This document shows, one piece after another, positions 12,874 to 25,116 of a DNA stretch of 64,000 bases. Made by a program: the position numbers and the translations under genes. Position 1 is the stretch's first letter. Each line of letters begins with the position of its first letter. The stretch is taken from positions 1 through 64,000 of the IMG/VR virus record IMGVR_UViG_3300032287_003113; one strand, 5' to 3'. The notes below the pieces were generated by a model. It made no database searches, was not told the origin of the DNA, and saw only the letters and a list, made by a program, of their open reading frames with translations.

Positions 12874-12898
12874 CAACTACCACAAATTTATTTATACT

Positions 12899-13660
12899 TC
12901 AAAAATACTGGGCATTGGCTCTTGGGAAGAAACATTCGTTATTTTGTAGTGGTTTAATTTTGATAGTTTCTAGTACAGTTTGCTTGCCCAGGCCCATGGC
13001 CAGGCTGTAAACAAAGTTTTGGTTGGCCATAATTAGGTTAGCACCAGCCACAATGTTGGCCAGTTCTAAAAAGTTATTGACTGGATGATATGGGATGGCA
13101 ACTCCGGTTACCTGTACAAAATCCGCATGCTCTTCTTTGGTTCCTACAAAAATACCCAGCCGATCTAACACACCATCTTCGGCCATTTTTTTCCATGTAG
13201 CATCAGCGGCAGGGTCACGATAACGGAATGTACGGCTTACTACCATAGGTTTGGTTGTGACTGGATCTGCTTCTAGCCAAGGAGTATCATAATCTGCCAA
13301 GGTAAATGGCAAACCAAATGCTATGTGATATGCTTGTACATAGTTACCTTCAAACCCACGGAACAAGGTACCACGGAACCGATCTAGGTCCACCGCAGGT
13401 TCAGCATCGCCTTGGCGCCAGGTACCCACTGATTCGATATAACTCTGACGCTTGAGCAGGGGCTTTAACCATTCAAAGTCTTGTTCGGTAAAGCGACCCT
13501 TGTGTGCAGGATCTACTTCGTCGGGTCTATATCCATATTGGCTTACGCAATTTTCAATGTTGTTTAAGGCAACTAAAAATTGCCCCGATTCCATTTTTTT
13601 TACCACGCTTAGGCTGTAGATAAGGTCGCCTAGTGTACCTGAATGTCTGTATGTTTTCAT
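12899..13660 (-). CDS. GT-B (GT9-like) glycosyltransferase-related protein
   Basis: HSGTLGDLIY and ELANIVAGA...NQ..YSLA motifs; glycan-cluster context. Confidence 0.55.
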   Translation of the reverse strand: MKTYRHSGTLGDLIYSLSVVKKMESGQFLVALNNIENCVSQYGYRPDEVDPAHKGRFTEQDFEWLKPLLKRQSYIESVGTWRQGDAEPAVDLDRFRGTLFRGFEGNYVQAYHIAFGLPFTLADYDTPWLEADPVTTKPMVVSRTFRYRDPAADATWKKMAEDGVLDRLGIFVGTKEEHADFVQVTGVAIPYHPVNNFLELANIVAGANLIMANQNFVYSLAMGLGKQTVLETIKIKPLQNNECFFPRANAQYF

Positions 13661-14547
13661 AATTGTCCTAAAATAGCTGTAGCAATTTTTTCTGTGTCAA
13701 AGTTGTTGTTACAAGGTGTCTCACCTTTTTTACATACTAATTGGCGTACAGGACGGGCCTGGTCCCGATTACACCCGCGACAATCTTCCATGGTTGTAAT
13801 GGCTGTAGAATTATAGGCAGGTTCAAAACGTCGATATGGCATAATACATTCAGGATCCAAGTGTGTCAGCAAAGCGACAATATGAGTGCTACTTGCGGCA
13901 GCACATTGAAATGGCCCTGAATCTATGCCAACAAAACATTGTGCATGATCGCACAGATATTTCATTTGTTGACTATTGTATTTTGCACGGAGATCAACAA
14001 ACAGCGGATGATCAATGTAGTGATCTGTCGCCCCACCTACGCATACCACTTTGAAATCTGTGCGGGATTCAAACAATTGAGCATATACATCAAGCCATAT
14101 ATCCAAGGTAATGTTTTTGGCAGTCCAATGCCAGTTACGCATGTGAACCACAATGAACCGGTCTCCTATGTCTGTCAAGTCTGCGTCTACCGCTTGTTTA
14201 TCTTCATCAGTGGGAAATAACTCTACCGCCATGTTTTTATTTGTGTCCGCAAACACACGATAAAAGTAATTTTTTACATAGTGTTCTGTGGGATTGAGCT
14301 CGTAGGCATCATCAAGGTTGTAGTACAAGTCCCATCGACCTTTGACATCAGGAACTTGATCAACTGGGAACACATTGCGAACGTGCGGATTGTTGCGGTA
14401 AGGTTCTGCAAAGTCTGTGGCTATGTCAATGTTGGCATCGGCGCCATATCGACGTTTGAGTTCACGTACAACGCCTGTGGTCATGATGACATCGCCAATG
14501 GCGGCACGTCTCTGTACTAGGATGTTTATTGGTTTTTCAATCTTCAC
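13657..14547 (-). CDS. Glycosyltransferase family 9 (heptosyltransferase-like)
   Basis: AIGDVIMT, FVGIDSGP. Confidence 0.85.
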   Translation of the reverse strand: MKIEKPINILVQRRAAIGDVIMTTGVVRELKRRYGADANIDIATDFAEPYRNNPHVRNVFPVDQVPDVKGRWDLYYNLDDAYELNPTEHYVKNYFYRVFADTNKNMAVELFPTDEDKQAVDADLTDIGDRFIVVHMRNWHWTAKNITLDIWLDVYAQLFESRTDFKVVCVGGATDHYIDHPLFVDLRAKYNSQQMKYLCDHAQCFVGIDSGPFQCAAASSTHIVALLTHLDPECIMPYRRFEPAYNSTAITTMEDCRGCNRDQARPVRQLVCKKGETPCNNNFDTEKIATAILGQL

Positions 14548-14908
14548 TGGTATGGTCTTGTTTGATTTCTCGAACAGGGTCGTTGAGCTTGTCTGCTATT
14601 GAATTTTTGTATTGCACTCTATAATTGTTTAGGTCTCTTATGTCTAATGCACGTTTCCCAATTTCTGCTAGATCAGCACCGTCAATACGACATTTTTTAA
14701 AATCATCTTCCATGGCCCAAATACGTCGATGTATATCTTCTAATGCCGATAGCTCTGCTTGTATCAACTGTACATCCAATTTGGCTATTTGTGCAGAGTA
14801 GAAATCCAATTCAGCTGTGTTGGAGCCACGGGTTTTGTCGTATTTTACACGAGCTATGGTATATCTGTCAACCAGCTCAATCACAGGAAAACTAAACTCA
14901 GTCGTCAT
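14537..14908 (-). CDS. Hypothetical helical protein
   Basis: ELVDRYTI...IWAMED...N.YR...K..I motif; glycan-cluster context. Confidence 0.55.
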   Translation of the reverse strand: MTTEFSFPVIELVDRYTIARVKYDKTRGSNTAELDFYSAQIAKLDVQLIQAELSALEDIHRRIWAMEDDFKKCRIDGADLAEIGKRALDIRDLNNYRVQYKNSIADKLNDPVREIKQDHTSED

Positions 14909-16121
14909 TGAAATCGGTTTTTAATTTGGGAAAGTAACGCATAAATCCGTCGCCGGGCTGATTTCGTATTGCCTTGATCTTGTTTGTAATCTCTGTGTAA
15001 AAATTCCAGGCCAACGGAACAAATATGACTTTTTTATCTGCAGGCATCTGTTGAATGTAGTCACTGCTGACCACAGGTATTTCTGTGCCCGGGCAGTACA
15101 ATCCTTGTTTGAGAGGATTATCATCTATCACAACATCAAGATCAATGCCCGACGCATTGATCAAAGTCATGCCCTTGGCCGCAGCCCCATAGCCTATTAC
15201 TGTATAACCAAATCCGCGATACTCATCAATTTGATCTTTTAATCGTGTTAATAAATCTTTTACATTGGTAGACCAGGTGTGATATGTGTCTGGTTGATGT
15301 AGTCGTGTTTCTGTAGCCAATATGTTTTTTACTCTGTGCTCGTTGCGTGGTTGCTTGGCCAGCACAAAAATATAACTTGTACCGTGTATAGGAGTCTTGA
15401 CCACATCTATTAGATACATGCCGGCACGTTCAGCCAACTGCTTCATTGATTCAGCATTGTAATAACTGATATGTTCGTGATAGATTGTGTCAAATTCTCC
15501 GTTTACAACCATGTCGGCTTGACTTGTACTGATAAAAAGTCTGCCATCGGGTCGCAAATATTCTGCAGCCAACTTTAAATAACTCAAGGGATCAGGAATA
15601 TGACTAAAAGCATTTTGACTGGTAATTGCATCAAAACTGTCCTGACCCAACTGTTTAGCTGTTTCTGCGTTCCAGAATCCACACACCACTGAGTGGTTGG
15701 CACTGGATATAGGATACAAGTTTTCTGCAGGATCTATGCCCCAGGTTTGAAACTGTGCTTGACGGAATGCGTCAAGTTGACTGCCATCGTTACAGCCAAT
15801 GTCTAATACTGTGGTGGGCCAATAGCTAAATTGCTCACGCACAAACCAAGCATACCAAGCACTATACTCTCTCAGTGTGGCACTAGTACCTGATACGTAC
15901 AGATAGTGTTTGTAGATCAACTCAGGGTTTACTGCATGAGTCAATTGTAGGTGATCGCAAGACTCACAGCGATTGATACTTAATGGATAGCGTGATTCAT
16001 GTATGGTGGTACGGATTTCTCTAAAAGCGTTGGCTAGAGGTTGCGGCTCAAAATTCAAAGTGGGTGTCAGCACATGGTGACCACATGCTAGACATTCTGT
16101 TATAGGCTTAAATTTTTCCAT
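14898..16121 (-). CDS. NDP-sugar C-methyltransferase (class I SAM)
   Basis: Zn-finger CxxC, YLYVSG, DIGCNDG, FDTIYHEH, GYGAAAKG, LAWNF. Confidence 0.85.
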   Translation of the reverse strand: MEKFKPITECLACGHHVLTPTLNFEPQPLANAFREIRTTIHESRYPLSINRCESCDHLQLTHAVNPELIYKHYLYVSGTSATLREYSAWYAWFVREQFSYWPTTVLDIGCNDGSQLDAFRQAQFQTWGIDPAENLYPISSANHSVVCGFWNAETAKQLGQDSFDAITSQNAFSHIPDPLSYLKLAAEYLRPDGRLFISTSQADMVVNGEFDTIYHEHISYYNAESMKQLAERAGMYLIDVVKTPIHGTSYIFVLAKQPRNEHRVKNILATETRLHQPDTYHTWSTNVKDLLTRLKDQIDEYRGFGYTVIGYGAAAKGMTLINASGIDLDVVIDDNPLKQGLYCPGTEIPVVSSDYIQQMPADKKVIFVPLAWNFYTEITNKIKAIRNQPGDGFMRYFPKLKTDFNDD

Positions 16122-16846
16122 TAGTTTTTAATTGCTGTACCGTTGGGTGCAATACAACCTTCTACGCCCAGGTTTTGTATTTCGTGTACATGCGGTTGTG
16201 GCAAAAATTTATACAACACATGCTCAATATCTACATATCCGCCTGCGGCTACACGTTGAGCAAAGAACACAAAACTGTCTTGATAAATCTGTATAGTTTC
16301 ATCAAGCCTGGCAACGGGCCACGACCATAAACGTGCCATGTACTGTAGCGGAACTGTGGTTACTTCTATGGGAAATTGACTTTTATACTTAGGACCAATG
16401 ATAAACTTGTCTGCTATGTCAGTTTGCTCATAGGTCTCTGGATCAAACATGTCATTCAATACGTAACGTCCAGACATTTTGTGTATACGATCAACACCTG
16501 CAAATTGACCAGAATCTTTTAGCATGGTCAATGCACGACTAAAACACATGATTTCTGTGCCATTTTTGACCACGTCCCAGTTGTCGCTGTCGTACATGTC
16601 TTGTACGTCTGGGTCTGTACTAAAATTAATCACTGTGTCACAGGATTTTGCCAACGCTATTAGTTGTTCTTCGGTTACCGGAGTACCACAACATTCCATG
16701 ATAAAGATCTTGGCTGTGGGTATTTTACTCTTAATACTCTTAACAGTATCTAGTGTCTGTTGCAATCGTTCTGCAGGAGTAAACACACCAAACTTACTAT
16801 TAACAGCACTTGTTACCACAAATGCATGTTTTATTTGCTGAGCCAT
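16121..16846 (-). CDS. Hypothetical protein, possible glycosyltransferase
   Basis: ERLQQTLDTV, KNGTE, KMSGRY, DIEH. Confidence 0.5.
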   Translation of the reverse strand: MAQQIKHAFVVTSAVNSKFGVFTPAERLQQTLDTVKSIKSKIPTAKIFIMECCGTPVTEEQLIALAKSCDTVINFSTDPDVQDMYDSDNWDVVKNGTEIMCFSRALTMLKDSGQFAGVDRIHKMSGRYVLNDMFDPETYEQTDIADKFIIGPKYKSQFPIEVTTVPLQYMARLWSWPVARLDETIQIYQDSFVFFAQRVAAGGYVDIEHVLYKFLPQPHVHEIQNLGVEGCIAPNGTAIKN

Positions 16847-17871
16847 CTGTGATTCTCCAAAGTCCATTTAGTCATTTCTGCGATGCGTTCGCTTAGTTTA
16901 ATCTTTGGCTCCCATCCCAGTTGTTTTAACAGGCCGCCATCTAGGGCGTAACGTAGATCATGTCCAGGTCTGCTTCCGTGGAAGTCGACCATTTCATAGT
17001 TTAATTCTCGGCCTTGTGCAGCCGCAACCATTTTAGCCAAGGTCAAGTTATCAATTTCTTCTGTGCCTACCAGGTTAAACTTGGGGCAATGAGCCCAACC
17101 ATAGTCTCCGGTGTGTTTGTAATTGTGTGGCAAGGTTTCAAGAATAAACATCAGGCCTTCGGCCACATCCTTGGCATGGATATACATGCGTGTGCCAGCT
17201 TCTGTACAATCTTCGTTGGCATGGATATACACTTTTTCGCCATCCCTGGCACGTTGGATGCACATGGGAATGAACTTCTCTGGATGTTGGCGTTCACCAA
17301 ACACGTTCATGGTGTGGGTTACCACGATAGGCATCTTGTAGGTGTTTTCATAAGCCACACAAAACTCTTCCGCGGCTGCTTTACTGGCTGAATACGGATT
17401 TGTTGAGTTATAACGATCATATTCTCGATAGCTGACTCCCGGAGGAGCAACACCAAAGATTTCGTCTGTGGAGAAATAAACAAAACGTTCCAGGTTGGGC
17501 AAGTGTTTACGAGTATAGTCTAACAGGTGTACTGTGCCAACCACGTTGTCTTGCACAAACTCCATGGGATATTGGATACTGCGATCCACGTGCGATCCTG
17601 CAGCCAAGTGTAACACAATGTCCACAGGACCAATGTCCTTGACAATCATTTCGTTGAGTTCGGCTTTGAGGTCGTGGAATACAATGCGTAGTCGCTGGCT
17701 TACTTTGACCGGATCATGGTCTTGTAGCATGTCGTGTAAACGATTTAGGTTACCTGAAATATCCAGGCGATCCAGACATACGATCCGCCAGTCGGTGTCG
17801 TTTAAAATTTTATCAATTACATGATGTGCGATGAATCCGGCACCGCCGGTGATTAATACTGTCTTTGACAT
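16831..17871 (-). CDS. rmlB: NDP-glucose 4,6-dehydratase (RmlB-like)
   Basis: TGGAGFI, HLAAGSHVDRS, STDE, PYSASK, RPGHDLRY. Confidence 0.9.
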   Translation of the reverse strand: MSKTVLITGGAGFIAHHVIDKILNDTDWRIVCLDRLDISGNLNRLHDMLQDHDPVKVSQRLRIVFHDLKAELNEMIVKDIGPVDIVLHLAAGSHVDRSIQYPMEFVQDNVVGTVHLLDYTRKHLPNLERFVYFSTDEIFGVAPPGVSYREYDRYNSTNPYSASKAAAEEFCVAYENTYKMPIVVTHTMNVFGERQHPEKFIPMCIQRARDGEKVYIHANEDCTEAGTRMYIHAKDVAEGLMFILETLPHNYKHTGDYGWAHCPKFNLVGTEEIDNLTLAKMVAAAQGRELNYEMVDFHGSRPGHDLRYALDGGLLKQLGWEPKIKLSERIAEMTKWTLENHRWLSK

Positions 17872-17918
17872 GTTGTTCCTAATTGAATTTTATATTATAT
17901 ACTAGTTGAAATGCAATG

Positions 17919-18776
17919 TCAAGCACGACAAGCATCTGTACAGCTCTTACACAGGCTTTCATCTGTGTAATGTGGTAAAGCATTTAATTCTAACAAGCGT
18001 TGCATGGCCGGATTGGTCGGTAGATCCGCATAGTCTTGTTCGAGCAAATTGCCCATAACATGTTTTTTATCATAGTCCATACAGCACAGCAGTACTTCGC
18101 CGTTTGGTAACAGTACTCCCTGATTGTACAGATCGGTTTTGCTACATTTGACGGGATAGTTGTGTTTGGGACTGAACGCAATTGGTTGCTCTTTGACCGA
18201 CTCTGTATCCAAGGTACCAGCACGATCATGTGCAGCAATTGACCATGAGTGACTGACACCGACCCCGGGAAGATTTTGGATTGCAGGATGAACTCCGTGA
18301 TCGCTCATGGTCATGGCTTCGTAGTGTATGCCAGCGGCTTGTACCACAGCAGTTACACCAGCAAATGCATAGTTCCATTCTTCACTGGGTTTCCAACCTT
18401 TCATGTTGCCTTGGTCGTCGGGGAAGTGTATTTTGACAATATCCACCTGACTGGCATAGTTGATCAACAACTCGCCCATGCGGTGCACAGTTGCTTCGTC
18501 CCAGTTGTACAATGTGGTAAAAATTGCTGCTCTAAATCCCTGTTGCATGGCATATTCAAACATGTCGGTGCAGTTGGGATTTACCCAGGGTTCTGCTTGT
18601 CCCGAAAAGTCCAGTCGCACATGAGTGGGTATTTTGTCTACTATGGTTTTAAAGTCTGCCAGCGTCATGTATTTTACATCATCGCCGTAGGCATCTCGTA
18701 AACTGTCCTGCGGACAGTAGTTGCACATCAATGGGCAACCAATCATTGTGGTAATTTCTAAGGTGTATGCGTTCAT
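17919..18776 (-). CDS. Radical SAM protein with C-terminal SPASM/twitch domain
   Basis: CPLMCNYC; C...CC.D...GNL...CKSC. Confidence 0.85.
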   Translation of the reverse strand: MNAYTLEITTMIGCPLMCNYCPQDSLRDAYGDDVKYMTLADFKTIVDKIPTHVRLDFSGQAEPWVNPNCTDMFEYAMQQGFRAAIFTTLYNWDEATVHRMGELLINYASQVDIVKIHFPDDQGNMKGWKPSEEWNYAFAGVTAVVQAAGIHYEAMTMSDHGVHPAIQNLPGVGVSHSWSIAAHDRAGTLDTESVKEQPIAFSPKHNYPVKCSKTDLYNQGVLLPNGEVLLCCMDYDKKHVMGNLLEQDYADLPTNPAMQRLLELNALPHYTDESLCKSCTDACRA

Positions 18777-19642
18777 CTGATTGTGTATGGAAACTCTGGT
18801 AATAGGGCTCTGGCCTGTGTGACTGGATTATTTAAAATGTACTGTTGATATTTATTCTGATTGTCGCACAGGTATTTTGGAAAGTAGTTGTCCAACTCTA
18901 CAATTTCATAACTGTCGTCGCTGTCTTGTTTCCAACTGGTGCGTTTGGCGATGCTGGCTTCGGGGTCTATTTGTGCCAAAAATTCTGGTGTGTTTACTTC
19001 CTGATGGCTAAAACTCTGGGCTTTGTCTATCAAATAGTCTCTATCACCCATGTAACCAAAATGCCACCCGGCATGTTCTACCACTTCACATCCATTGTTA
19101 CTAAACTGATATTCACTGCCAAAAAAACTAAAACGCATGTCTCTTAGGCTGTTGGCTGTGATATCTTTGAGCACACGGCATCTAGCAGCCATGCCCCAAA
19201 TGTTATATCTATCGGGACTGAGCTTCATATAATTAAATTTAAAATTAAATATGGGCATACGCATAGCAAACAGAGTCTGATCACTACGACGCATATAATC
19301 AACAGCCTGTGTTCGCGGTATTTCATCAACATCCGAAATGATAATGATATCGTTGTCATCGGCCTTGGTTAACCCGCGAACAATGGCATTTCGTTGAAAG
19401 TGTTCGTTGTCCCAGGGATTGGCACTGGCCGGCATATCGGTCACTTGTACATAGATCACTTTGTCCAAATAGGGCTTAAAGCGGTCTGTATGATCGTACA
19501 AGTTGAATGGTTTGGCTCGATTTGTAAAGGTTTGGTTAGATTCAACAATGACAAAGTGGTCTACTTTGTCGTATAATTCACTTAAACGCAGTTCCAGTAG
19601 GTCAAGCTCATTGTAAAATGTAAAGCAATCATATATTTTCAT
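18773..19642 (-). CDS. Glycosyltransferase family 17 (GnT-III-like)
   Basis: IYDCFTFYNELDLLELRL, SDVDEIP, AGWHF. Confidence 0.85.
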   Translation of the reverse strand: MKIYDCFTFYNELDLLELRLSELYDKVDHFVIVESNQTFTNRAKPFNLYDHTDRFKPYLDKVIYVQVTDMPASANPWDNEHFQRNAIVRGLTKADDNDIIIISDVDEIPRTQAVDYMRRSDQTLFAMRMPIFNFKFNYMKLSPDRYNIWGMAARCRVLKDITANSLRDMRFSFFGSEYQFSNNGCEVVEHAGWHFGYMGDRDYLIDKAQSFSHQEVNTPEFLAQIDPEASIAKRTSWKQDSDDSYEIVELDNYFPKYLCDNQNKYQQYILNNPVTQARALLPEFPYTIR

Positions 19643-19645
19643 AGC

Positions 19646-19668
19646 TGTATTTAAGCATAATAAATACC
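19646..19668. promoter_or_regulatory. Back-to-back TAAATAC late-type promoter motifs between divergent glycan operons
   Basis: GTATTTA (minus-strand TAAATAC) and TAAATAC on the plus strand within 52 bp. Confidence 0.5.
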
Positions 19669-19693
19669 TTACTGTCAAATTTTCAAGGATCAT

Positions 19694-20335
19694 ATGTACG
19701 CTGTCGCAAGTATCAACACACTAGACTATCAAGATTTAGCCGATTTAACTGATGCACCCAAACAGGAATACTGTGATCTACACGGATACGAATTCCATGT
19801 ACTCAAGGAAACACGGTACAGTCCTATTATGGGCTTTAACAAAATCCACTATGTATTAGACATTTTTAAACAACGCCCTGATATCGAGTGGTTGTTGTTT
19901 AGTGAATGCGATGCCATGATTACCAACATGACTATCCGAATGGAAGATCGGATTGATAACGATTATCATTTTATTGTACCCGTAGATAGATTAAACATCA
20001 ACTCAGGCAACTTCTTGGCTCGTAACAGTGAAGAAGGTCGTGCTTACTTACAAATGATTGTGGACTTGGAAGAAAGCTATAAAGACGTTGAGTGGGCCGA
20101 ACAACAGGTTATCATTGACACAGTATCAGACCTGTCTGCTATTGTTAAAATTGTTCCACAGCGTTACATGAACAGCTATGAACCGCAGATTTATGATTAC
20201 TGCGATGCACGTTTTGATATCATGGGTAACTCAGGCGCTTGGGAACCCGGAGATTGGATTGTACACTGGCCCGGCACATATAAACCGGCTCGTATTGAAC
20301 GAGCAACTGAATTAAGCAAACAAATTGTTAGATGA
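19694..20335 (+). CDS. Glycosyltransferase family 34-like
   Basis: K.EYC..HGY, ECDA, INSGNFL, WAEQ, WEPGDWIVHWPG. Confidence 0.8.
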   Translation: MYAVASINTLDYQDLADLTDAPKQEYCDLHGYEFHVLKETRYSPIMGFNKIHYVLDIFKQRPDIEWLLFSECDAMITNMTIRMEDRIDNDYHFIVPVDRLNINSGNFLARNSEEGRAYLQMIVDLEESYKDVEWAEQQVIIDTVSDLSAIVKIVPQRYMNSYEPQIYDYCDARFDIMGNSGAWEPGDWIVHWPGTYKPARIERATELSKQIVR

Positions 20336-21147
20336 TGGAACACATTTTTAAACTGCCGCCTATCAGGCAAGCCTACAGCAACGATTATACACAGTATGGT
20401 CGTCCGGGTGTGATTGGTTATTGGTTTGAAATGGATCATCCCTATGAAGGGCATAGAGATTTTAGTCAAACCCTAGATATCTATCTCAATGACTACAACT
20501 GGAGTAAAATATTAAAACCCGGTACTACTATTGTAGACATTGGTGCACACAGTGGAGATACTGCTGTACCCATGATGGCCATGAGTGGCTATTGTGTACT
20601 GACTGTAGAATGTAATCCTACCATATATCCTTGGTTGGAGTTTGCCTGCAACATGAATCGCCATCTGGGCAAGTTTGTGGTTGCCAGTGAAGCTGTGACC
20701 ACAGAAGATAACGTCACAGTAACATTCAGTGATCACAACAACGGTATGTGTAACGGAGGCCTAGTAAATCATAACTGGGGCATCGGCGCTGGATCAGGTT
20801 CTATTGATGTGCCGGGTATCCGGTTAGAAACCCTGTGTCGTAGATATTTAAATGCGGAAGAAATTGCCCGCATTGATCTTATCAAGGTTGACACCGAGGG
20901 TCATGATTTTGTAATATTAGACAGTAGCCGTGAGTTTATTGACAGCTTACGTCCAAAGTTGTTTGTAGAGTGGTTTAGTGGCTTTGGTGCAGATGAAGTC
21001 CGGCGTATGTTTGATATTGTTGCCAGCATGGACTATGTTCCGTTATATCCAAAAACATTCGAGACAGCTGATCCAGCTCGACCCAGCGAAGATTTGTTGT
21101 TGATACACAGTACAAAATTACAAGAGTTTTTACAAGAAGTACGATAA
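20332..21147 (+). CDS. FkbM family methyltransferase
   Basis: VDIGAHSG, IKVDTEGHD. Confidence 0.85.
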   Translation: MMEHIFKLPPIRQAYSNDYTQYGRPGVIGYWFEMDHPYEGHRDFSQTLDIYLNDYNWSKILKPGTTIVDIGAHSGDTAVPMMAMSGYCVLTVECNPTIYPWLEFACNMNRHLGKFVVASEAVTTEDNVTVTFSDHNNGMCNGGLVNHNWGIGAGSGSIDVPGIRLETLCRRYLNAEEIARIDLIKVDTEGHDFVILDSSREFIDSLRPKLFVEWFSGFGADEVRRMFDIVASMDYVPLYPKTFETADPARPSEDLLLIHSTKLQEFLQEVR

Positions 21148-21983
21148 TGAAAATTTTAATCACCGGCACCACAGGATTTTTAGGACGCAGCCTGGCCGAC
21201 TATTTTGGTACCACTCACGAGGTCATTGAACACACCAGAACCAGTGTTAGACTCAGTGGAGCCATTTACATACACAAGCCCGATCTAATTATTCATTGTG
21301 CTGGCGAAATATACAAAACTGACGTTATGTATGATACCAATGTTGGCATGGTCAACGAAATACTGGAAAGTGTGCGTGAATACTGTCCTGGTTGCCGAGT
21401 TATACAGATAGGCAGTAGTGCCGAATATGGCCCAATGAATCGTGCTACATCAGAAACAGATCCAATCAATCCAGTGGACGTGTATCAAGCCACCAAGGGT
21501 GCTGCTACACTATTATGTCAAGCCTATGCCCGACAGTACGGGCTTAAAACCATGGTAGCAAGAATATACTCAGGTTATGGCATACACGAAAGACCACACA
21601 GGTTATTTCCCACACTATATCGTGCGTTTTTCAATGATGAGCCAATGACCTTGTATCAAGGCTATCACGACTTTATCTACATTGAAGACTTTGTACGTGC
21701 CATAGATCAAGTCAAAGATTTTGTTTGGGAACCAGGTGAAATCATAAACTTTGGCTCCGGTCGACAGCACAGCAATTTTGAAGTACTAGAAGCCTGGGAA
21801 CGAATTACTGGTCGTACAGCACCAGTAGAAAAACGTGATCAACTCAGCAAAGCCTACGAAAGCACAGTATGGGTGTGTGACAACACCAAGCTACGCATCA
21901 GGTGCGGATTTCAATTGCAATATGACCTAGAAGCAGGCATACAAGATTTTATAAAGAAAATGCAAAATGTTAAAACAAATTAA
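21147..21983 (+). CDS. NAD-dependent epimerase/dehydratase
   Basis: TGTTGFLG, GSSAEYG, YQATK. Confidence 0.85.
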   Translation: MKILITGTTGFLGRSLADYFGTTHEVIEHTRTSVRLSGAIYIHKPDLIIHCAGEIYKTDVMYDTNVGMVNEILESVREYCPGCRVIQIGSSAEYGPMNRATSETDPINPVDVYQATKGAATLLCQAYARQYGLKTMVARIYSGYGIHERPHRLFPTLYRAFFNDEPMTLYQGYHDFIYIEDFVRAIDQVKDFVWEPGEIINFGSGRQHSNFEVLEAWERITGRTAPVEKRDQLSKAYESTVWVCDNTKLRIRCGFQLQYDLEAGIQDFIKKMQNVKTN

Positions 21984-22677
21984 AACAACAAAAGATAGAA
22001 TTCACAATATTGAAACCGACGATGCAGAAATTGTTGATTGGTTTGATCGTCCAGACGTGACCATGACTGACTGCATTCTAGATCAGCTCAACAATGAACG
22101 TCTATACGATCCGGTACTGGCCAACAAAGAAAATTTAATCATGCTCGATGTTGGGGCAAACATAGGACTGTTTAGTTTGTATGCTCAGGACAGCGCCAAA
22201 CAGATCATTTGCCTAGAGCCAACTCCTAACACACTTGGCATTTTAGAAAAACTCACAGCCGGCATTGACTGTATTAAAATAGCACCTGTTGCTCTCAGCG
22301 ACAGTGATGGAGAAATTATATTTTACATCAATGAAAACCCCACAATCAATTCCGTGGTAAATCAAGTTGGTACAGAAGTTCGAGTACAAGCTCGCACCAT
22401 TGAAACTGTGCTACGAGAGCAGGCTCTTGACTGGGTGGACTTTGTCAAATGCGATATTGAAGGCTCAGAAATGTTGGCCATTACTGAAGCCACAATTGAT
22501 CCAGTCAAGGACAAGATTGGTAGTTGGTTCATTGAAGTGCATCAAACCAATGGCAACACTGGTGCACCATGGCCTGGAAACTTGGAAGATAACAGACAGC
22601 AACTACTTGCTGTTTTACGCAATGCTGGATACTCAGCAGAACCAATTATTCACGATCAAATATTTGCATGGAAATGA
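21967..22677 (+). CDS. FkbM family methyltransferase
   Basis: DVGANIG, VKCDIEGSE. Confidence 0.85.
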   Translation: MLKQIKTTKDRIHNIETDDAEIVDWFDRPDVTMTDCILDQLNNERLYDPVLANKENLIMLDVGANIGLFSLYAQDSAKQIICLEPTPNTLGILEKLTAGIDCIKIAPVALSDSDGEIIFYINENPTINSVVNQVGTEVRVQARTIETVLREQALDWVDFVKCDIEGSEMLAITEATIDPVKDKIGSWFIEVHQTNGNTGAPWPGNLEDNRQQLLAVLRNAGYSAEPIIHDQIFAWK

Positions 22678-23288
22678 CACCTTTACAACGCAGAGTAGTT
22701 GACATTACATATCAGGAAAGACTGAGTCATCTCAGTTCAACCTTGAGTGCTTTGCCTATCATTGAAGAAATTTATGCTGAACGCCAAGCGGATGAAGTAT
22801 TCATCCTGAGCAACGGTCATGCTGGATTGGCCCTGTATGTTGTGTTAGAAAAATATTACGGAGTAGATCCTGTTGCCTTGTTACATAAACACGGTATACA
22901 CCCAGGTAAAGATTTAGAAAATCATTTGTACTGTAGTACAGGCAGTTTGGGGTCAGGATTACCTATTGCTGTAGGACACGCACTGGCTACTCCACACAAG
23001 AAGGTCTACTGTATGATTTCAGACGGCGAGTGTGCCGAAGGTAGTATTTGGGAAAGTTTACGTTTTATTAACGAGCATCCGGTTGATAATTTAGAAGTGT
23101 ATGTGAATGTCAACGGACTGGGTGCATACGATAGCATTGACTCTGCGTACCTAATTCAACGCTTACAATGTTTTTTACCACGCATCCGCATCAAACAAAG
23201 TGATCCACTGAGATGGTCATTTGCCCAAGATTTGCTGACACACTACTATGTATTAAATGAAGAAAATTATCAGGAGATCGTCAGATGA
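22668..23288 (+). CDS. Transketolase-like, ThDP-binding N-terminal subunit
   Basis: LSNGHA, STGSLGSGL, SDGECAEGSIWE. Confidence 0.85.
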   Translation: MEMTPLQRRVVDITYQERLSHLSSTLSALPIIEEIYAERQADEVFILSNGHAGLALYVVLEKYYGVDPVALLHKHGIHPGKDLENHLYCSTGSLGSGLPIAVGHALATPHKKVYCMISDGECAEGSIWESLRFINEHPVDNLEVYVNVNGLGAYDSIDSAYLIQRLQCFLPRIRIKQSDPLRWSFAQDLLTHYYVLNEENYQEIVR

Positions 23289-23767
23289 GAAAAGAATGTG
23301 CTCAGTTACTCCTGGAAGAAATGAGTGTGAACGATCGCATACGTGTGGTCACTGCCGACTTGGGTTTTGGTATCTTAGATCATATCCGTAATGCATACCC
23401 GGATCGTTTTTATAACGTGGGTGCTGCAGAACAACTGATGATTGGTGTGGCTGTGGGCATGGCCGAGAATGGATTGATTCCTGTGTGTTATTCAATGAGT
23501 AGTTTCTTGTTGTATCGTCCATTTGAATTCTTACGTAATTATGTTGACTACGAAGGCATCAATGTCAAACTGTTAGGATCAGGTCGCAACAAAGATTATA
23601 GTCATGATGGAATTAGCCATTGGGCACACGATGATGAAAAAGTATTACAGGCATTGCCAAACATTGAAATGTACAAGCCAGGTAGTTTAGAAGAACTTGA
23701 TATGAATTTTGATCAATGGATCAACAGCACCAAACCTGGCTACTTAAACTTAACGAGAAAAATATGA
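23285..23767 (+). CDS. Transketolase-like, pyrimidine-binding subunit
   Basis: TADLG, NVGAAEQ, DGISH. Confidence 0.85.
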   Translation: MRKECAQLLLEEMSVNDRIRVVTADLGFGILDHIRNAYPDRFYNVGAAEQLMIGVAVGMAENGLIPVCYSMSSFLLYRPFEFLRNYVDYEGINVKLLGSGRNKDYSHDGISHWAHDDEKVLQALPNIEMYKPGSLEELDMNFDQWINSTKPGYLNLTRKI

Positions 23768-24708
23768 AACGTGTAGTATATGTAACCGGATGTTTGGGAT
23801 TGATAGGCAGTCACGTGACTCGTGCTTGTTTAAATAAAGGATGGTATGTTCGCGGAGTAGACAGCGTGACCTATGCGGCCACTGCCAACATAGATGAATT
23901 TTTTGATTATGAAAATTTTACGTTTGAAGAGTCGGATATCAACGATATTGAACGCCTATACAACTGTGATTACATTATTAATACAGCCGCAGAAACACAC
24001 GTGGACAACTCAATACTTTCCAGTGATGTGTTCCTAAAGAGCAACATCAATGGTGTACACCATTTGCTAGAACTCATCAAAGAGGCCAAACACAAGCCAA
24101 CTCTGCTACACTTTAGCACAGACGAAGTTTACGGCGATCTAGTTGACGGTTTTCACCAAGAAACTGACCTGCTCAAGCCAAGTAATCCTTATAGTGCTAC
24201 CAAGGCAGCCGCAGATCAATTGATACTGGCTTGGGCTCGTACATTCAATGTGCCTTATGTGATTGTGCGTCCAACCAACAACTATGGTATTGGACAATAC
24301 ATTGAAAAATTTATTCCTACCAGCATCAAGGCACTGAGCTTGGGTCGTCCTATTCCCTTACACGATGCTGGTTTACCCAAGCGTACCTGGCTACACGCAA
24401 GTGACACAGCCGAAGCCATTATTACTTTAATCGAAGCCGGTGTGCAAAACGATATCTTTAACATTTCAGGCAACTACGAAGAACAAAACATTGTGGTTGC
24501 TAAAAAGATTATCGACATGTACTACTTGGGTGGATGTAAAGGATTGTATGATGAGCATCTCGATACAGGTATCAAGCGTCAAGGACAGGATGTGCGTTAT
24601 GCAATTGATGACGCCAAAATAAAAGCCCTGGGTTGGATGCCCCGGGCCAATTTTGATACAGAACTACGAGCAATAGTGGATCACTACGCTAAAAACTTCG
24701 TCTGGTAA
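23764..24708 (+). CDS. NDP-sugar 4,6-dehydratase (second RmlB-like gene)
   Basis: AAETHVDNS, STDEVYG, PYSATK, RQGQDVRY. Confidence 0.85.
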   Translation: MKRVVYVTGCLGLIGSHVTRACLNKGWYVRGVDSVTYAATANIDEFFDYENFTFEESDINDIERLYNCDYIINTAAETHVDNSILSSDVFLKSNINGVHHLLELIKEAKHKPTLLHFSTDEVYGDLVDGFHQETDLLKPSNPYSATKAAADQLILAWARTFNVPYVIVRPTNNYGIGQYIEKFIPTSIKALSLGRPIPLHDAGLPKRTWLHASDTAEAIITLIEAGVQNDIFNISGNYEEQNIVVAKKIIDMYYLGGCKGLYDEHLDTGIKRQGQDVRYAIDDAKIKALGWMPRANFDTELRAIVDHYAKNFVW

Positions 24709-24939: not shown

Positions 24940-25116
24940 TTATCTGCCGCGACCGGCGGATTTTTTGGCTGGTTTGTTTGTGCTGACTTGACCGCCGTGT
25001 TTGGCGGCTTGTACATGTGCTGTTTTGGTTCCGGGCACTCGTGGATTGGCTGCTACAGCCTTGGCGGCGTTGGCCATGTTGATAAAAGGATTTTTGGATT
25101 TTTTAGTGTCTGTCAT
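24940..25116 (-). CDS. Small basic Lys/Ala-rich protein (58 aa)
   Basis: MTDTKKSKNPFINMANAAKAV...SAGRGR. Confidence 0.55.
   Translation of the reverse strand: MTDTKKSKNPFINMANAAKAVAANPRVPGTKTAHVQAAKHGGQVSTNKPAKKSAGRGR

What the first reader, a model, noticed from the sequence alone, without database searches (positions are those of the whole stretch)
12899..24708. 12-kb glycan island that may build methylated, branched-chain deoxysugars
Seen: two RmlB-like dehydratases, an epimerase/reductase, an NDP-sugar C-methyltransferase, a split minimal transketolase pair, two FkbM methyltransferases, GT9/GT17/GT34-like transferases and a radical SAM gene, in divergent operons sharing TAAATAC motifs. 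Known: ThDP enzymes add two-carbon branches to 4-keto NDP-sugars (YerE-type chemistry). Inference: late-expressed glycosylation of the virion (the Asn/Thr-rich fibre is a candidate) or host LPS remodelling.
Basis: partly seen in the sequence, partly recalled or inferred. Interest (0 to 1): 0.6.

Follow-up and report, generated by a model that had tools for sequence, protein, structure and literature searches.

The report
Jumbo-phage sugar island with mini-transketolase
A large freshwater phage carries a conserved 12-kb block of 15 genes for making and attaching unusual methylated deoxysugars, including a stripped-down two-piece transketolase. The same enzyme also sits in sugar-modifying gene clusters of many uncultured bacteria and probably adds a two-carbon unit to an activated sugar.

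Summary
Window 12899-24708 is 15 back-to-back genes in two divergent operons. They encode two RmlB-type 4,6-dehydratases, one reductase/epimerase-type SDR, a TylC3-type sugar 3-C-methyltransferase, two FkbM methyltransferases and a radical SAM/SPASM enzyme. They also encode GT9, GT17 and GT34 transferases and a two-gene transketolase of 206 + 160 aa. Two unannotated genes fold as further glycosyltransferases, giving five in all, and every product is predicted soluble.

The host record is a 220-kb fragment of a T4-core jumbo myophage of about 360 kb, found in freshwater. The island is syntenic in relatives.

The mini-transketolase is the new part:
- It lacks the transketolase C-terminal domain.
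- Two of the four substrate-phosphate-binding positions are Gly.
- In 11 bacterial loci from different lineages it sits in a conserved cassette: SDR, methyltransferase, TK-N, TK-C, then a PgfS/ArnC-like polyprenyl-phosphate glycosyltransferase.

This places it in nucleotide-sugar tailoring, not the pentose-phosphate pathway. The closest precedent is the split-gene transketolases proposed, but not yet proven, for miharamycin and amipurimycin. YerE belongs to a different family.

Timing is mixed. One operon has a conserved late-type ATAAATA motif, and part of the other has a perfect sigma-70 promoter. Whether the glycan goes onto the virion or the host envelope is unresolved.

The parts
12899..13660 (-). 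Compact GT9-like (GT-B fold) glycosyltransferase, 253 aa, with no Pfam match
   Evidence: The AlphaFold model has pLDDT 89.3. Foldseek best hits are the GT9 protein 3tov, WaaC 2h1h, WaaF 1psw and TibC 4rb4, with E 1.6e-6 to 1e-4. The protein atlas lead was also GT9, score 0.95. The gene is conserved in L002-L007 at 62-82% identity.
13657..14547 (-). GT9 (heptosyltransferase family) glycosyltransferase, 296 aa
   Evidence: PF01075 scores 28.6 bits against a cut-off of 22. Heptosyltransferase III and RfaQ models match weakly.
14537..14908 (-). Small 123-aa ORF, a lineage-specific insert of unknown role
   Evidence: The DUF6165 match is weak, 20.5 bits against a cut-off of 27. The ORF is absent at this position in L002 and L004.
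14898..16121 (-). NDP-4-keto-hexose 3-C-methyltransferase of the TylC3/TcaB9 type, 407 aa
   Evidence: It has PF08421 (zinc domain), PF13489 and PF08484. PDB matches are TylC3 4rv9 at E 2e-60, and TcaB9 and KijD1 at about 1e-45.
16121..16867 (-). GT-A-fold glycosyltransferase-like protein. The likely true start is 16846, giving 241 aa.
   Evidence: There is no Pfam match. The model has pLDDT 84.5. Foldseek hits are alpha-1,3-galactosyltransferase, glycogenin and ABO transferases, E about 1e-6, TM about 0.5. Homologues are 241 aa.
16831..17871 (-). RmlB-type NDP-hexose 4,6-dehydratase, 346 aa
   Evidence: TIGR01181 scores 232 bits, below its equivalog cut-off of 365. It has the STDEIFG and YSASK motifs. 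It is 83-87% identical in relatives.
17894..17922 (-). Perfect sigma-70-type promoter (TTGACA-17-TATAAT) in front of the dehydratase gene
   Evidence: It matches 12 of 12 positions. It is one of four perfect sites in 220 kb, and one of 27 sites with at most one mismatch against about 3 expected. It is kept in L002 and replaced by an AATAAATA element in L004.
17919..18776 (-). Radical SAM enzyme with a SPASM/twitch-type C-terminal cluster, 285 aa, substrate unknown
   Evidence: PF13186 scores 36.7 bits and PF04055 scores 21.8 bits, below cut-off. The CPLMCNYC motif is at residues 14-21. The gene is in the same place in L002 and moved about 2 kb away in L004.
18773..19642 (-). GT17-family glycosyltransferase, 289 aa from the ATG at 19642
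   Evidence: PF04724 scores 103.7 bits. The start was chosen from L002/L004 gene lengths and the aligned intergenic region.
19643..19693 (.). Divergent 51-bp control region with an inverted GTATTTA...TAAATAC pair. The plus-strand CATAATAAATACC lies 27 nt before the GT34 start, followed by an AAGGA ribosome-binding site.
   Evidence: The plus-strand element is invariant in G000, L002 and L004, and the minus-strand copy is lost in L004. ATAAATA precedes tail sheath, tube, portal, baseplate and fibre genes.
19694..20335 (+). GT34-family (GT-A) glycosyltransferase, 213 aa
   Evidence: PF05637 scores 67.2 bits. It is 73-80% identical in relatives.
20332..21147 (+). FkbM-family methyltransferase 1, a lineage-specific accessory gene
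   Evidence: PF05050 scores 46.4 bits. It is absent in L002 and L004, and L004 has a Methyltransf_24 gene elsewhere in the operon instead.
21147..21983 (+). Short extended SDR of the reductase/epimerase type, 278 aa. It is the conserved partner of the transketolase pair.
   Evidence: PF01370 scores 109 bits. It has SSAEYG and YQATK and lacks the dehydratase Asp-Glu pair. A homologue lies next to TK-N/TK-C in most cellular loci.
21967..22677 (+). FkbM-family methyltransferase 2, a core gene of the island
   Evidence: PF05050 scores 51.2 bits and TIGR01444 scores 78.6 bits. It is present in L002-L007 at 46-47% identity.
22668..23288 (+). Mini-transketolase subunit N (ThDP diphosphate-binding PP domain), 206 aa
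   Evidence: It matches PF02775 and PF00456. The human transketolase alignment gives E 8e-13 and shows the GH, GSLG and DGE...EG...N motifs. About 5000 near-identical homologues of 204-206 aa exist, and 107 clusters at 50% identity score E<1e-30. H21, H51, D119, G120 and N149 are invariant.
23285..23767 (+). Mini-transketolase subunit C (pyrimidine-binding Pyr domain only), 160 aa, with no transketolase C-terminal domain
   Evidence: PF02779 gives E 6e-19. It aligns to residues 41-172 of the 341-aa Carboxydothermus split-transketolase C chain. The family is 155-187 aa long. Gly occupies the positions of human Ser345 and His416. The predicted complex with subunit N scores ipSAE 0.85 against a best control of 0.00.
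23764..24708 (+). RmlB-type NDP-hexose 4,6-dehydratase. The ORF opens at 23716, and the likely start is 23764, overlapping the TK-C stop codon.
   Evidence: TIGR01181 scores 277 bits against a cut-off of 365. It has the STDEVYG and YSATK motifs. It is 92% identical in L002, and 52-55% homologues lie near TK pairs in L019, L020 and L022.
24942..24961 (+). Terminator-like GC hairpin plus T-run, closing the plus operon
   Evidence: It is the best terminator-like site in the region, with 8 pairs of which 5 are GC.
46679..47437 (-). Probable accessory gene outside the island: an RfaE-domain-II-like sugar-1-phosphate adenylyltransferase fused to a mannose-6-phosphate-isomerase-type cupin
   Evidence: It matches PF01467 and PF01050. 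TIGR02199 gives E 8e-21, below cut-off. Its homologue lies about 5 kb from the island in L004-L007, where RfaE-domain-I kinase and domain-II genes flank the island.

Best explanation
The island is a self-contained, cytoplasmic factory for making and attaching unusual sugars. It is a conserved part of the genome of an abundant freshwater jumbo myophage.

Proposed pathway (inferred):
- The two RmlB-type dehydratases turn NDP-hexoses into NDP-4-keto-6-deoxyhexoses.
- In one line, the TylC3-type enzyme adds a C-methyl group at C3.
- In the other line, the mini-transketolase (an alpha/beta ThDP enzyme made of only a PP and a Pyr domain) transfers a two-carbon ketol or acyl unit onto the keto-sugar.
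- The partner 278-aa SDR then reduces a carbonyl, and FkbM enzymes O-methylate the product.
- Five soluble glycosyltransferases (two GT9-like, one GT17, one GT34 and one GT6/GT8-like GT-A) then assemble these sugars, probably with a heptose, on an acceptor at the cytoplasmic side. The most likely acceptor is virion proteins. The host LPS core is the alternative.

Shown: the gene identities, motifs, synteny, the family-wide gene neighbourhood and the promoter motifs.
Inferred: the order of steps, the transketolase acceptor and donor, the nucleotide carrier and the glycan's target.
For: - Gene content and catalytic motifs.
- The two unknown ORFs fold as GT9-like and GT-A glycosyltransferases.
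- The whole island is syntenic, next to GroES/GroEL, in other large phage contigs. Sugar-making enzymes are the most conserved (TK-N 78-80%, dehydratases 83-92%). Transferases and methyltransferases are less so (44-51%).
- The mini-TK pair keeps the transketolase cofactor site (GDG-type Mg site, Asn, the AEQ Glu, invariant His residues).
- The two subunits are predicted to bind through that site. The ipSAE is 0.85 against a best control of 0.00. That mark was reached by 51 of 78 solved complexes and 2 of 108 mismatched pairs. Contact agreement between runs was 100% and the partner's pLDDT was at least 93.
- The pair lacks the C-terminal domain, and has Gly at the positions of the phosphate-binding Ser345 and His416 of human transketolase.
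- In every context examined the pair is flanked by an SDR of the G[ST]S[SA]EYG type, methyltransferases and glycosyltransferases. These contexts were divergent metagenome copies and MAGs labelled Patescibacteria/CPR, Omnitrophota, Gammaproteobacteria, Bacteroidales, Planctomycetales, Actinomycetota and Acidobacteriota.
- The Pfam tally over 11 cellular loci was GT2 20, methyltransferases 16, Epimerase 14, FkbM 7 and PMT_2 3.
- The gene after TK-C in those loci is a PgfS/ArnC-like polyprenyl-phosphate glycosyltransferase.
- An RmlB-type dehydratase is translationally coupled to TK-C in the phage, and a homologue is linked to the pair in L019, L020 and L022.
- No island protein has a predicted membrane segment. 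The only two polytopic membrane ORFs in the 220 kb are TauE-like and Bax1-I-like, so no flippase, polymerase, ligase or initiating phosphoglycosyltransferase was found.
- Precedent: split-gene transketolases are proposed to add a hydroxyacetyl branch to a keto sugar next to an oxidoreductase (PMC12247030). DesAB, a split transketolase, is proposed to cleave the ketol side chain from a tertiary carbinol of cortisol (PMC3735941).
- The late-type ATAAATA element before the plus operon is invariant in relatives, and the same motif precedes tail and portal genes.
Against: - No enzymology or glycan analysis exists for any member.
- Transketolases normally use aldehyde acceptors. The ketone-acceptor role is unproven even for the Streptomyces enzymes (PMC12247030).
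- The pair keeps the Arg aligned with human Arg318, and a C-terminal Arg that may correspond to Arg474. A phosphorylated substrate therefore remains possible.
- Both dehydratases score below the dTDP-glucose dehydratase equivalog cut-off, so the nucleotide and the hexose are unknown.
- No RmlA-type nucleotidyltransferase (PF00483) is present in the 220 kb.
- There is only one reductase-type SDR for two deoxysugar lines.
- GT9 and WavE-like enzymes are typical of LPS core assembly, which also uses soluble or peripheral transferases.
- A perfect sigma-70 promoter before the minus-strand dehydratase argues for early as well as late expression.
- The record is only about 51-60% of the genome, so statements about absent genes are weak.
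Confidence: 0.62

Rival explanations
1. The chemistry is the same, but the target is the host envelope. The soluble GT9-like and GT-A transferases decorate the lipid A-core, or another inner-leaflet acceptor, of the infected cell. This changes the cell surface to block superinfection or to stop progeny sticking to debris.
For: - GT9 is the LPS-core heptosyltransferase family, and the fold hits are WaaC and WaaF.
- The atlas lead for the 248-aa protein was WavE, a Vibrio core-LPS family.
- Core transferases need no membrane segments.
- A perfect sigma-70 promoter before the dehydratase/C-methyltransferase/GT9 genes suggests early expression by host polymerase.
- In cellular genomes the same transketolase cassette feeds a lipid-linked surface pathway, with a PgfS/ArnC-like GT2 and PMT_2.
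Against: - The plus operon carries a conserved late-type motif shared with virion genes. In L004 the dehydratase too is preceded by AATAAATA.
- The phage has T4-like core genes and no integrase was looked for or seen, so classical seroconversion is not indicated.
- TibC-type GT9 enzymes, which glycosylate proteins, are also among the fold hits.
- The phage lacks the polyprenyl-phosphate GT2 that the cellular cassettes have.
Confidence: 0.3
2. The transketolase pair is an ordinary, if shortened, pentose-phosphate enzyme. It boosts sedoheptulose-7-phosphate for a phage-encoded ADP-heptose route that feeds the two GT9-like heptosyltransferases. It does not act on nucleotide sugars.
For: - The window encodes an RfaE-domain-II-like adenylyltransferase fused to a PMI-type cupin, which could isomerise sedoheptulose-7-P.
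- Relatives L004-L007 have an RfaE-domain-I-like kinase, a domain-II adenylyltransferase and a cupin beside the island.
- Two GT9-like genes are present.
- The pair keeps the cofactor site, the catalytic His residues and the Arg aligned with Arg318.
Against: - In 11 cellular loci the pair sits with an SDR, a methyltransferase and a polyprenyl-phosphate GT2. No heptose kinase, adenylyltransferase or other PfkB/CTP_transf_like family appears among the 25 most frequent families.
- Gly replaces the positions of the phosphate-binding Ser and His. Canonical split transketolases found in the same scan keep S/T and H there.
- The host already makes sedoheptulose-7-P.
- The pair is translationally coupled to a 4,6-dehydratase.
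Confidence: 0.12
3. The glycosyltransferases hypermodify the phage DNA with sugars, as T-even and other phages do, to escape restriction.
For: - Phage glycosyltransferases that decorate DNA with diverse glycans are known (Pyle et al. 2024, cited in PMC12619734).
- The transferases are soluble.
- A dCMP deaminase lies 5 kb away.
Against: - The one thymidylate-synthase-family gene is a full-length, very strong ThyA match at 344 bits. No ThyX or second family member that could be a hydroxymethylase was found.
- GT9, GT17 and GT34 families are not the known DNA glucosyltransferase families (from general knowledge).
- The record is incomplete, so this is not excluded.
Confidence: 0.05

Closest known systems
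Split-gene transketolases proposed for the hydroxyacetyl branch of miharamycin/amipurimycin, plus 13 Streptomyces BGC sequences (review PMC12247030)
   Same: Both are two-gene transketolase-type ThDP enzymes encoded beside an oxidoreductase in a sugar-tailoring cluster. Both are proposed to add a two-carbon unit to a keto sugar, and both remain biochemically unproven.
   Different: - The phage/CPR type is much smaller (about 205 + 160 aa) and lacks the transketolase C-terminal domain.
- It occurs in phages and in many non-actinobacterial lineages.
- It is linked to glycoconjugate rather than antibiotic pathways.
- Direct sequence comparison with the Streptomyces proteins was not done, because no sequences were in hand.
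YerE (Yersinia yersiniose A) and YerE-like lyases ErwE, MMAR_2332
   Same: Both are ThDP-dependent, act on an NDP-4-keto-deoxysugar to build a C-branch, and are followed by a reductase (YerF).
   Different: YerE is a single-chain decarboxylase/AHAS-superfamily enzyme that uses pyruvate or longer 2-keto acids (PMC12247030). The phage enzyme is transketolase-type, with PF00456/PF02779 domains in PP-then-Pyr order on two chains.
Alpha-keto acid dehydrogenase E1-type pairs (aldgamycin, kibdelomycin KbDH-alpha/beta, avilamycin)
   Same: Both are heteromeric alpha/beta ThDP enzymes that install C2 branches on deoxy-keto sugars (PMC12247030).
   Different: They belong to a different ThDP superfamily. 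The PDH E1-alpha model matched the phage PP subunit only at E 3e-4, and those enzymes use pyruvate as donor.
Canonical and split transketolase (human TKT 3mos/4kxu; Carboxydothermus split TK 6yaj/6yak)
   Same: The cofactor-binding motifs, the catalytic His/Glu residues and the PP:Pyr interface are shared.
   Different: - There is no C-terminal domain.
- Both ends of the N subunit are trimmed.
- Gly replaces the positions of Ser345 and His416.
- The gene context is nucleotide-sugar tailoring rather than central metabolism.
DesAB steroid-17,20-desmolase of Clostridium scindens (PMC3735941)
   Same: It is a split transketolase proposed to act on a non-phosphorylated substrate at a ketol attached to a tertiary carbinol. 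It is encoded beside an oxidoreductase (DesC).
   Different: It cleaves a steroid side chain rather than building a sugar, and its subunits are described as ordinary N- and C-terminal transketolase subunits.
TylC3 / TcaB9 / KijD1 NDP-hexose 3-C-methyltransferases
   Same: All three domains match over the full length, E 2e-60 to 1e-44.
   Different: It is phage-encoded. There is no 2,3-dehydratase or aminotransferase nearby, so the substrate is probably a 2-hydroxy 4-keto-6-deoxyhexose.
Virus-encoded glycosylation systems (mycobacteriophage virion glycosylation; chlorovirus and mimivirus glycan machinery)
   Same: In both, a virus carries its own sugar-nucleotide tailoring enzymes and soluble transferases.
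   Different: None of those systems is reported to include a transketolase-type enzyme or a sugar C-methyltransferase (my knowledge, plus the paper searches). The target here is unknown.

Membership tests
Transketolase (TK/DXS-type ThDP enzymes) | PP domain with a GDG-X(25-30)-N metal/diphosphate motif and a conserved His that binds the diphosphate | tested here: met
   The SDGECAEGS...VNVNG motif aligns to GDGELSEGS...LDINR of human TK, and LSNGHA aligns to LSKGHA. D119, G120, N149 and H51 are invariant in 30 family members.
Transketolase (TK/DXS-type ThDP enzymes) | Pyr domain with the cofactor-activating Glu (AEQ motif) | tested here: met
   PF02779 gives E 6e-19. The A/S-E-Q motif is conserved in all mini and long family members.
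Transketolase (TK/DXS-type ThDP enzymes) | Third, C-terminal domain (Transketolase_C) | tested here: not met
   Subunit C ends after the Pyr domain at 160 aa. It aligns to residues 41-172 of a 341-aa split-TK C chain. All 33 mini members are 155-187 aa, against 287-357 aa for long forms.
Transketolase (TK/DXS-type ThDP enzymes) | Substrate-phosphate binding set (human Arg318, Ser345, His416, Arg474) | tested here: inconclusive
   The Arg318 position is kept (R2). The Ser345 and His416 positions are Gly in every mini member and in a roughly 300-aa 'GDLGY' clade, whereas canonical split TKs keep S/T and H. A C-terminal Arg may correspond to Arg474, but this was not aligned directly.
YerE-like ThDP lyases (decarboxylase/AHAS superfamily) | A single chain of about 560 aa with TPP_enzyme_N (Pyr), middle and TPP_enzyme_C (PP) domains in that order | tested here: not met
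   There are two chains, with PP first and a transketolase-type Pyr (PF02779) second. AHAS and benzoylformate decarboxylase models match only about 40 residues around the GDG motif.
NDP-hexose 3-C-methyltransferase (TylC3/TcaB9) | N-terminal zinc-binding domain, class I SAM domain and C-terminal PF08484 domain | tested here: met
   PF08421 scores 51 bits, PF13489 87 bits and PF08484 105 bits. The match to 4rv9 covers residues 5-381 at E 2e-60.
dTDP-glucose 4,6-dehydratase (RmlB) | Extended SDR with a Thr-Asp-Glu catalytic triad motif and YxxxK | tested here: met
   The motifs are STDEVYG/YSATK and STDEIFG/YSASK.
dTDP-glucose 4,6-dehydratase (RmlB) | Score above the curated equivalog cut-off, which would imply dTDP-glucose specificity | tested here: not met
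   The scores are 277 and 232 bits against a cut-off of 365.1. The nucleotide and hexose are therefore open.
GT9 heptosyltransferases | GT-B fold with a PF01075 match. Use of ADP-heptose is the family norm. | tested here: inconclusive
   The 296-aa protein passes Pfam (28.6 against 22) but is far below every heptosyltransferase equivalog cut-off. The 253-aa protein matches by fold only. The donor sugar is not testable here. An RfaE-like activation gene is present in the window and in relatives.
T4-type late promoter | A TATAAATA-like -10 element upstream of late (virion) genes, read by a gp55-type sigma | tested here: inconclusive
   ATAAATA is about 20-fold enriched upstream of genes, including sheath, tube, portal, baseplate and fibre genes. 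It is conserved before the GT34 operon. No gp55/gp33 homologue was searched for, and transcript 5' ends are not available (one search returned contigs only).

The most novel reading that the evidence does not exclude
The roughly 205 + 160-aa transketolase pair and its dedicated SDR define a new, widespread two-domain ThDP enzyme family. The family forms a C-C bond on nucleotide-activated keto-sugars, a transketolase-type route to C2-branched or chain-extended sugars. It is used by CPR bacteria, Omnitrophota, Proteobacteria and others for lipid-linked surface glycans. A very abundant freshwater jumbo-phage clade has captured it to coat its virions with a doubly modified (C-methyl and C2-unit), O-methylated deoxysugar glycan.
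Probability: 0.35. Interest if true: 0.78.

Novelty: new variant of a known kind. Interest (0 to 1): 0.62.

Why it matters
A recent review states that a role for transketolases in building branched sugars is still pending, and that it is known only from 13 Streptomyces sequences (PMC12247030).

This finding supplies a compact version of about 365 residues in two chains. That version should be easy to express. It has about 5000 natural variants at 90% clustering and more than 100 clusters at 50% identity. It also has a fixed partner SDR and defined neighbours, so the question becomes directly testable.

If the chemistry holds, three things follow:
- It adds a new carboligase scaffold that forms tertiary alcohols.
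- It explains 'transketolase' genes in CPR and other reduced genomes that may be wrongly counted as pentose-phosphate enzymes.
- It shows that an abundant group of lake phages makes its own exotic glycans, which bears on host recognition, defence evasion and particle stability.

Tried and rejected
- A megablast of the island against 50,697 GenBank phage records found nothing.
- A tblastn of TK-N against the same set found only matches at or below 35% identity to ordinary transketolases, mostly in contaminated or bacterial records. No isolated phage in that set carries this pair.
- A profile scan of genomes with the 30-sequence alignment A1 failed for lack of a conserved stretch. The 9-sequence alignment A2 worked.
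- The 'moraphage' lineage paper (PMC12619734) describes genomes of 200-307 kb with four glycosyltransferase groups, but it mentions neither transketolase nor GroEL. I could not equate it with this clade.
- The split-transketolase biocatalysis paper (PMC13663882) has nothing on truncated forms or nucleotide sugars.
- For RNA evidence, two freshwater metatranscriptomes hold short, near-identical contigs over the GT17, GT34 and FkbM genes, and more divergent ones over the SDR, TK-N, TK-C and radical SAM genes. These are contigs from RNA libraries that may contain DNA. They give no 5' ends, strand or timing, so I count them only as weak support for expression.
- I considered that the pair might be a sulfopyruvate/phosphonopyruvate decarboxylase-type split enzyme. 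I rejected this because the domain order is PP then Pyr, the Pyr domain is transketolase-type, and those models match only at E 2e-3 to 8e-3.
- I considered a lipid-carrier (Wzx/Wzy) pathway. No such membrane proteins occur in the 220 kb, but the record is incomplete.
- TAAATAC as a stand-alone heptamer is not enriched in the window. Only its position, and the longer ATAAATA core, are meaningful.

Full report
**What the window is**

The window is the first 64 kb of a 219,879-bp linear IMG/VR virus record that CheckV rates 51% complete. Its portal protein is about 50% identical to those of the jumbo myophages Atu_ph07, Phosso and PA5oct. PHROG scans find a T4-like tail sheath, tube, baseplate wedge, portal and fibres. 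The window also holds a T4-type large terminase, a RecA/UvsX-like gene and a weak UvsY match. Relatives that carry the same island lie on contigs of 355-370 kb. One relative is filed at NCBI as an 'uncultured Caudovirales phage' protein. Near-identical island DNA occurs in freshwater metagenomes from at least seven studies other than the probable source. The genome is therefore a fragment of an abundant, uncultured freshwater jumbo phage.

**Checking the observation**

- There are fifteen tightly packed or overlapping genes in two divergent operons. They meet at a 51-bp spacer at 19643-19693, once the GT17 start is moved to the ATG at 19642, as in relatives.
- Both large SDRs keep the RmlB catalytic STDE(V/I)(Y/F)G and YxxxK motifs. 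The 278-aa SDR has SSAEYG, so it lacks the Asp-Glu pair and is a reductase/epimerase type.
- The C-methyltransferase has all three domains of the TylC3/TcaB9 family and matches TylC3 at E 2e-60.
- The radical SAM gene has a CPLMCNYC cluster motif and a Cys-rich SPASM-type tail.
- The two genes without Pfam hits were modelled at pLDDT 89 and 84.5. One folds as a compact GT9-like GT-B protein and the other as a GT-A protein resembling GT6/GT8 retaining transferases.
- The island therefore encodes five transferase-like proteins.
- None of the 15 products has a predicted membrane segment.

**The motif**

TAAATAC alone is not enriched in the window: 16 copies against 12.7 expected. However, 29 of the 45 ATAAATA copies in the record lie in sense orientation within 60 nt upstream of a gene start, about 20 times the expected number. 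The genes they precede include the sheath, tube, portal, baseplate wedge and fibre genes. This is the signature of a T4-type late promoter, an identification that rests on established knowledge of T4 late promoters.

The plus-strand copy, CATAATAAATACC, lies 27 nt before the GT34 start and is followed by AAGGA. It is invariant in G000, L002 and the more distant L004. The minus-strand copy is lost in L004.

Against a purely late programme, a perfect TTGACA-17-TATAAT promoter sits in the 47-bp gap before the minus-strand dehydratase. It is one of four perfect sites in the record. It is also one of 27 sites with at most one mismatch, where about three are expected. The promoter is kept in L002, but in L004 it is replaced by an AATAAATA element. 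Timing is therefore probably mixed and varies between lineages.

**Conservation in phages**

The whole island, in the same order and next to GroES/GroEL, is present on other large contigs: L002 from a 240-kb contig, and L004-L007 from freshwater samples.
- Sugar-making enzymes are the most conserved between lineages: TK-N 78-80%, TK-C 74-84%, and the dehydratases 83-92%.
- Transferases and methyltransferases diverge more: GT17 44%, GT9 51%, FkbM 46%.
- Accessory genes differ. FkbM-1 and the 123-aa ORF are specific to this lineage. L004 has an extra Methyltransf_24 gene, and its radical SAM gene sits about 2 kb away.
- This pattern suggests a fixed set of unusual sugars with variable linkage and methylation.

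**The mini-transketolase**

The 206-aa subunit aligns to the PP domain of human transketolase, with the GH, GSLG and DGE..EG..N motifs. The 160-aa subunit aligns to the Pyr domain, best to residues 41-172 of the 341-aa Carboxydothermus split-TK C chain.

The family is large.
- There are about 5000 clusters at 90% identity, all 204-206 aa, at 76-95% identity to the query.
- There are 107 clusters at 50% identity with E<1e-30.
- In a 30-member alignment H21, H51, D119, G120 and N149 are invariant, and H78, H192 and Y193 are nearly so.

A genome scan found full-length homologues at 40-51% identity in MAGs labelled Levyibacteriota, Roizmanbacteria, Microgenomates, other Patescibacteria, Omnitrophota, Gammaproteobacteria, Bacteroidales, Cloacimonas, Planctomycetales, Actinomycetota and Acidobacteriota, and in an Actinomarina single-cell genome. 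Several of these lie on contigs of 200-490 kb.

ORF extraction shows a clean split. Mini TK-C proteins are 155-187 aa and conventional split C subunits are 287-357 aa.

In the family alignment the positions of human Ser345 and His416 are Gly in all mini members. The mapping comes, using the 4kxu numbering, under which query R2 aligns to Arg318. The same positions are Gly in a roughly 300-aa 'GDLGY' clade. Canonical split transketolases found in the same scan keep S/T and H there. The Arg318 position and a C-terminal Arg are retained, so a phosphate or diphosphate contact is still possible.

The two subunits are predicted to bind through the cofactor-site elements. The ipSAE is 0.85 against a best control of 0.00. 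That mark was reached by 51 of 78 solved complexes and 2 of 108 mismatched pairs. Contact agreement between runs was 100% and the partner's pLDDT was at least 93. Because solved transketolases resemble this pair, the pass shows likeness rather than proof.

**Context in cells**

A tblastn of the island proteins against all fetched loci shows a homologue of the 278-aa SDR next to TK-N/TK-C in most cellular loci, often with a class I methyltransferase between them. The SDRs share a G[ST]S[SA]EYG...YxxTK signature.

A Pfam tally covered 134 ORFs within about 5-6 kb of the pair in 11 loci from different lineages. The counts were GT2 20, methyltransferases 16, Epimerase 14, the TK pair 11, FkbM 7, GT1 5 and PMT_2 3.

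The gene directly after TK-C is a 309-326-aa GT2. It is 66-84% identical across these lineages. It matches PgfS and ArnC, which are polyprenyl-phosphate glycosyltransferases, over its full length.

Divergent metagenome copies at 34-37% identity have the same neighbours.

In cells the cassette therefore modifies a nucleotide sugar that is then loaded onto a lipid carrier for surface glycosylation. The phage kept the tailoring part and replaced the lipid step with soluble transferases.

**Mechanism**

The following points are shown:
- a ThDP site of transketolase type;
- an obligate SDR partner;
- translational coupling to a 4,6-dehydratase in the phage;
- a nucleotide-sugar context throughout the family.

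The following steps are inferred:
- The dehydratase makes an NDP-4-keto-6-deoxyhexose.
- The mini-transketolase adds a two-carbon unit to it.
- The SDR reduces a carbonyl.
- FkbM enzymes O-methylate the product.

The nearest published parallel is the split-gene transketolase plus oxidoreductase proposed for the hydroxyacetyl branch of miharamycin/amipurimycin. A 2025 review calls that role still pending, and knows it only from 13 Streptomyces sequences (PMC12247030). DesAB, a split transketolase proposed to cut the ketol side chain from C17 of cortisol, shows the same bond type handled in reverse on a non-phosphorylated substrate (PMC3735941).

The second line of the island, a dehydratase plus a TylC3-type enzyme, should give a 3-C-methyl-6-deoxyhexose. 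Whether the two modifications end up on one sugar or on two cannot be told.

**Heptose and the main rival for the transketolase**

The window holds an RfaE-domain-II-like adenylyltransferase fused to a PMI-type cupin at 46679-47437. Relatives have an RfaE-domain-I-like kinase, a domain-II enzyme and a cupin beside the island. Together with the two GT9-like genes, this suggests that an ADP-heptose-type sugar is part of the glycan.

It also allows the rival reading that the transketolase merely supplies sedoheptulose-7-phosphate. I rate that reading at about 0.12. The cellular cassettes show no heptose-activation families among their frequent neighbours. The phosphate-binding Ser and His positions are lost.

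**Target**

No flippase, polymerase, ligase or initiating phosphoglycosyltransferase was found. The only two polytopic membrane ORFs in the 220 kb are TauE-like and Bax1-I-like. That finding, the late-type motif and the TibC-like fold hits all favour cytoplasmic glycosylation of proteins, most plausibly virion proteins.

The Asn/Thr-rich repeat protein at 2-1612 is 25.5% Asn plus Thr, against a median of 12%, and has many N-x-S/T triplets. It is one candidate. Several tail and fibre proteins at 88-151 kb of the record are equally Asn/Thr-rich.

LPS-core remodelling remains a serious rival at about 0.3. GT9 and WavE-like enzymes are core-type transferases that need no membrane segments, and part of the island has an early-type promoter.

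DNA glycosylation is unlikely. The only thymidylate-synthase-family gene is a strong ThyA, and no second member was found.

**Novelty and limits**

Virus-encoded glycan machinery is known, and so are ThDP-built branched sugars. Three things are new:
- a minimal, two-domain transketolase family tied to an SDR in nucleotide-sugar tailoring;
- its breadth across uncultured bacterial lineages;
- its capture by an abundant phage clade.

No curated family covers it. The best NCBIfam hit scores 78.6 bits against a cut-off of 488. The paper searches found no description of it.

All functional statements rest on sequence, predicted structure and gene context. No chemistry, glycan or transcript ends were observed. 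The record is incomplete, so absences are weak. RNA-library contigs over the island are only weak support for expression.

Noticed in passing
whole record G000; e.g. window 12889-12896(-), 27317-27324(-), 59600-61069 upstream; G000 67-150 kb: ATAAATA is a genome-wide, T4-late-like upstream motif. A subclass has ATAAATA-N5-ATG (for example before 59600-61069, 67815-68297, 69117-70595, 126140-126514). That spacing would give leaderless or nearly leaderless late mRNAs.
   Followed up: partly
G000: 27 sites, e.g. window 40142-40114(-), 49524-49496(-), 17922-17894(-); G000 188453-188425(-): Near-consensus sigma-70 promoters (at most one mismatch in 12) are about 9-fold over chance. Four are perfect. 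They probably form the early, host-polymerase promoter class of this phage.
   Followed up: partly
window 27965-29260(-), 48872-50119(-), 50349-51521(-), 52586-53740(-): There are four further radical SAM genes of 384-431 aa. Two have a SPASM domain at the N-terminus, ahead of the radical SAM core, which is an unusual order. They are interleaved with the UvsX/RecA-like (51472-52593) and UvsY-like genes. Their function is unknown.
   Followed up: no
window 10885-12504(-) and 12508-12876(-): The phage encodes a GroEL (about 70% identical to proteobacterial GroEL) and a GroES immediately downstream of the island. GroES is preceded by TATAAATA. This adjacency is conserved in relatives.
   Followed up: partly
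window 26301-27299(-), 41527-42576(-), 43648-44693(-), 25770-26297(-), 25119-25619(-), 10342-10806(-): Host-like auxiliary genes are present: a TRAP-type DctP solute-binding protein, a TctC/Bug-type receptor, an AhpC peroxiredoxin with a CMD-family protein, a redoxin, a small OMP beta-barrel-like protein and a gamma-glutamyl cyclotransferase-like protein. The TctC/DctP pair may hint at a proteobacterial (possibly Burkholderiales) host. This was not tested.
   Followed up: no
window 46679-48192(-): An RfaE-domain-II-like adenylyltransferase is fused to a mannose-6-phosphate-isomerase-type cupin and followed by a class I methyltransferase. The cupin could act as a sedoheptulose-7-P/heptose-7-P isomerase in place of GmhA, which is an untested idea. 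Relatives carry a split HldE (kinase plus adenylyltransferase) beside the island.
   Followed up: partly
window 2-1612(-) (open at the window edge): This is a fibre-like protein with 25.5% Asn plus Thr and repeated ANANV..YL and NAATQATSI motifs. It has many N-x-S/T triplets and no Pfam or PHROG match.
   Followed up: partly
L021, L028, L031, L036, L038, L042, L044, L046 (about 11.1-12.1 kb in each locus): The PgfS/ArnC-like GT2 that follows TK-C is 66-84% identical between MAGs labelled as different phyla. That is far more than expected for vertical descent, and it suggests the cassette spreads horizontally.
   Followed up: no
L019 (Thaumarchaeota MAG), L020 and L022 (Maricaulis MAG): These are short contigs of 9-14 kb carrying TK-N, TK-C, an SDR and a dehydratase at 50-55% identity to the phage proteins. 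They may be phage contigs binned into cellular MAGs.
   Followed up: no
L048, L054, L058, L059 (Sphingomonadales MAGs); L067, L074 (Gammaproteobacteria MAGs): Split TK-like pairs of conventional length share the Gly substitutions of the mini family. They sit beside homologues of both the dehydratase-type and the reductase-type SDR. They look like a full-length sister group with the same likely role.
   Followed up: partly
G000 129739-142311(+); G000 192489-193451(-), 202860-203537(-): There is a 4190-aa giant ORF after the baseplate wedge gene. The record's only two polytopic membrane proteins are TauE/SafE-like and Bax1-I/YccA-like.
   Followed up: partly
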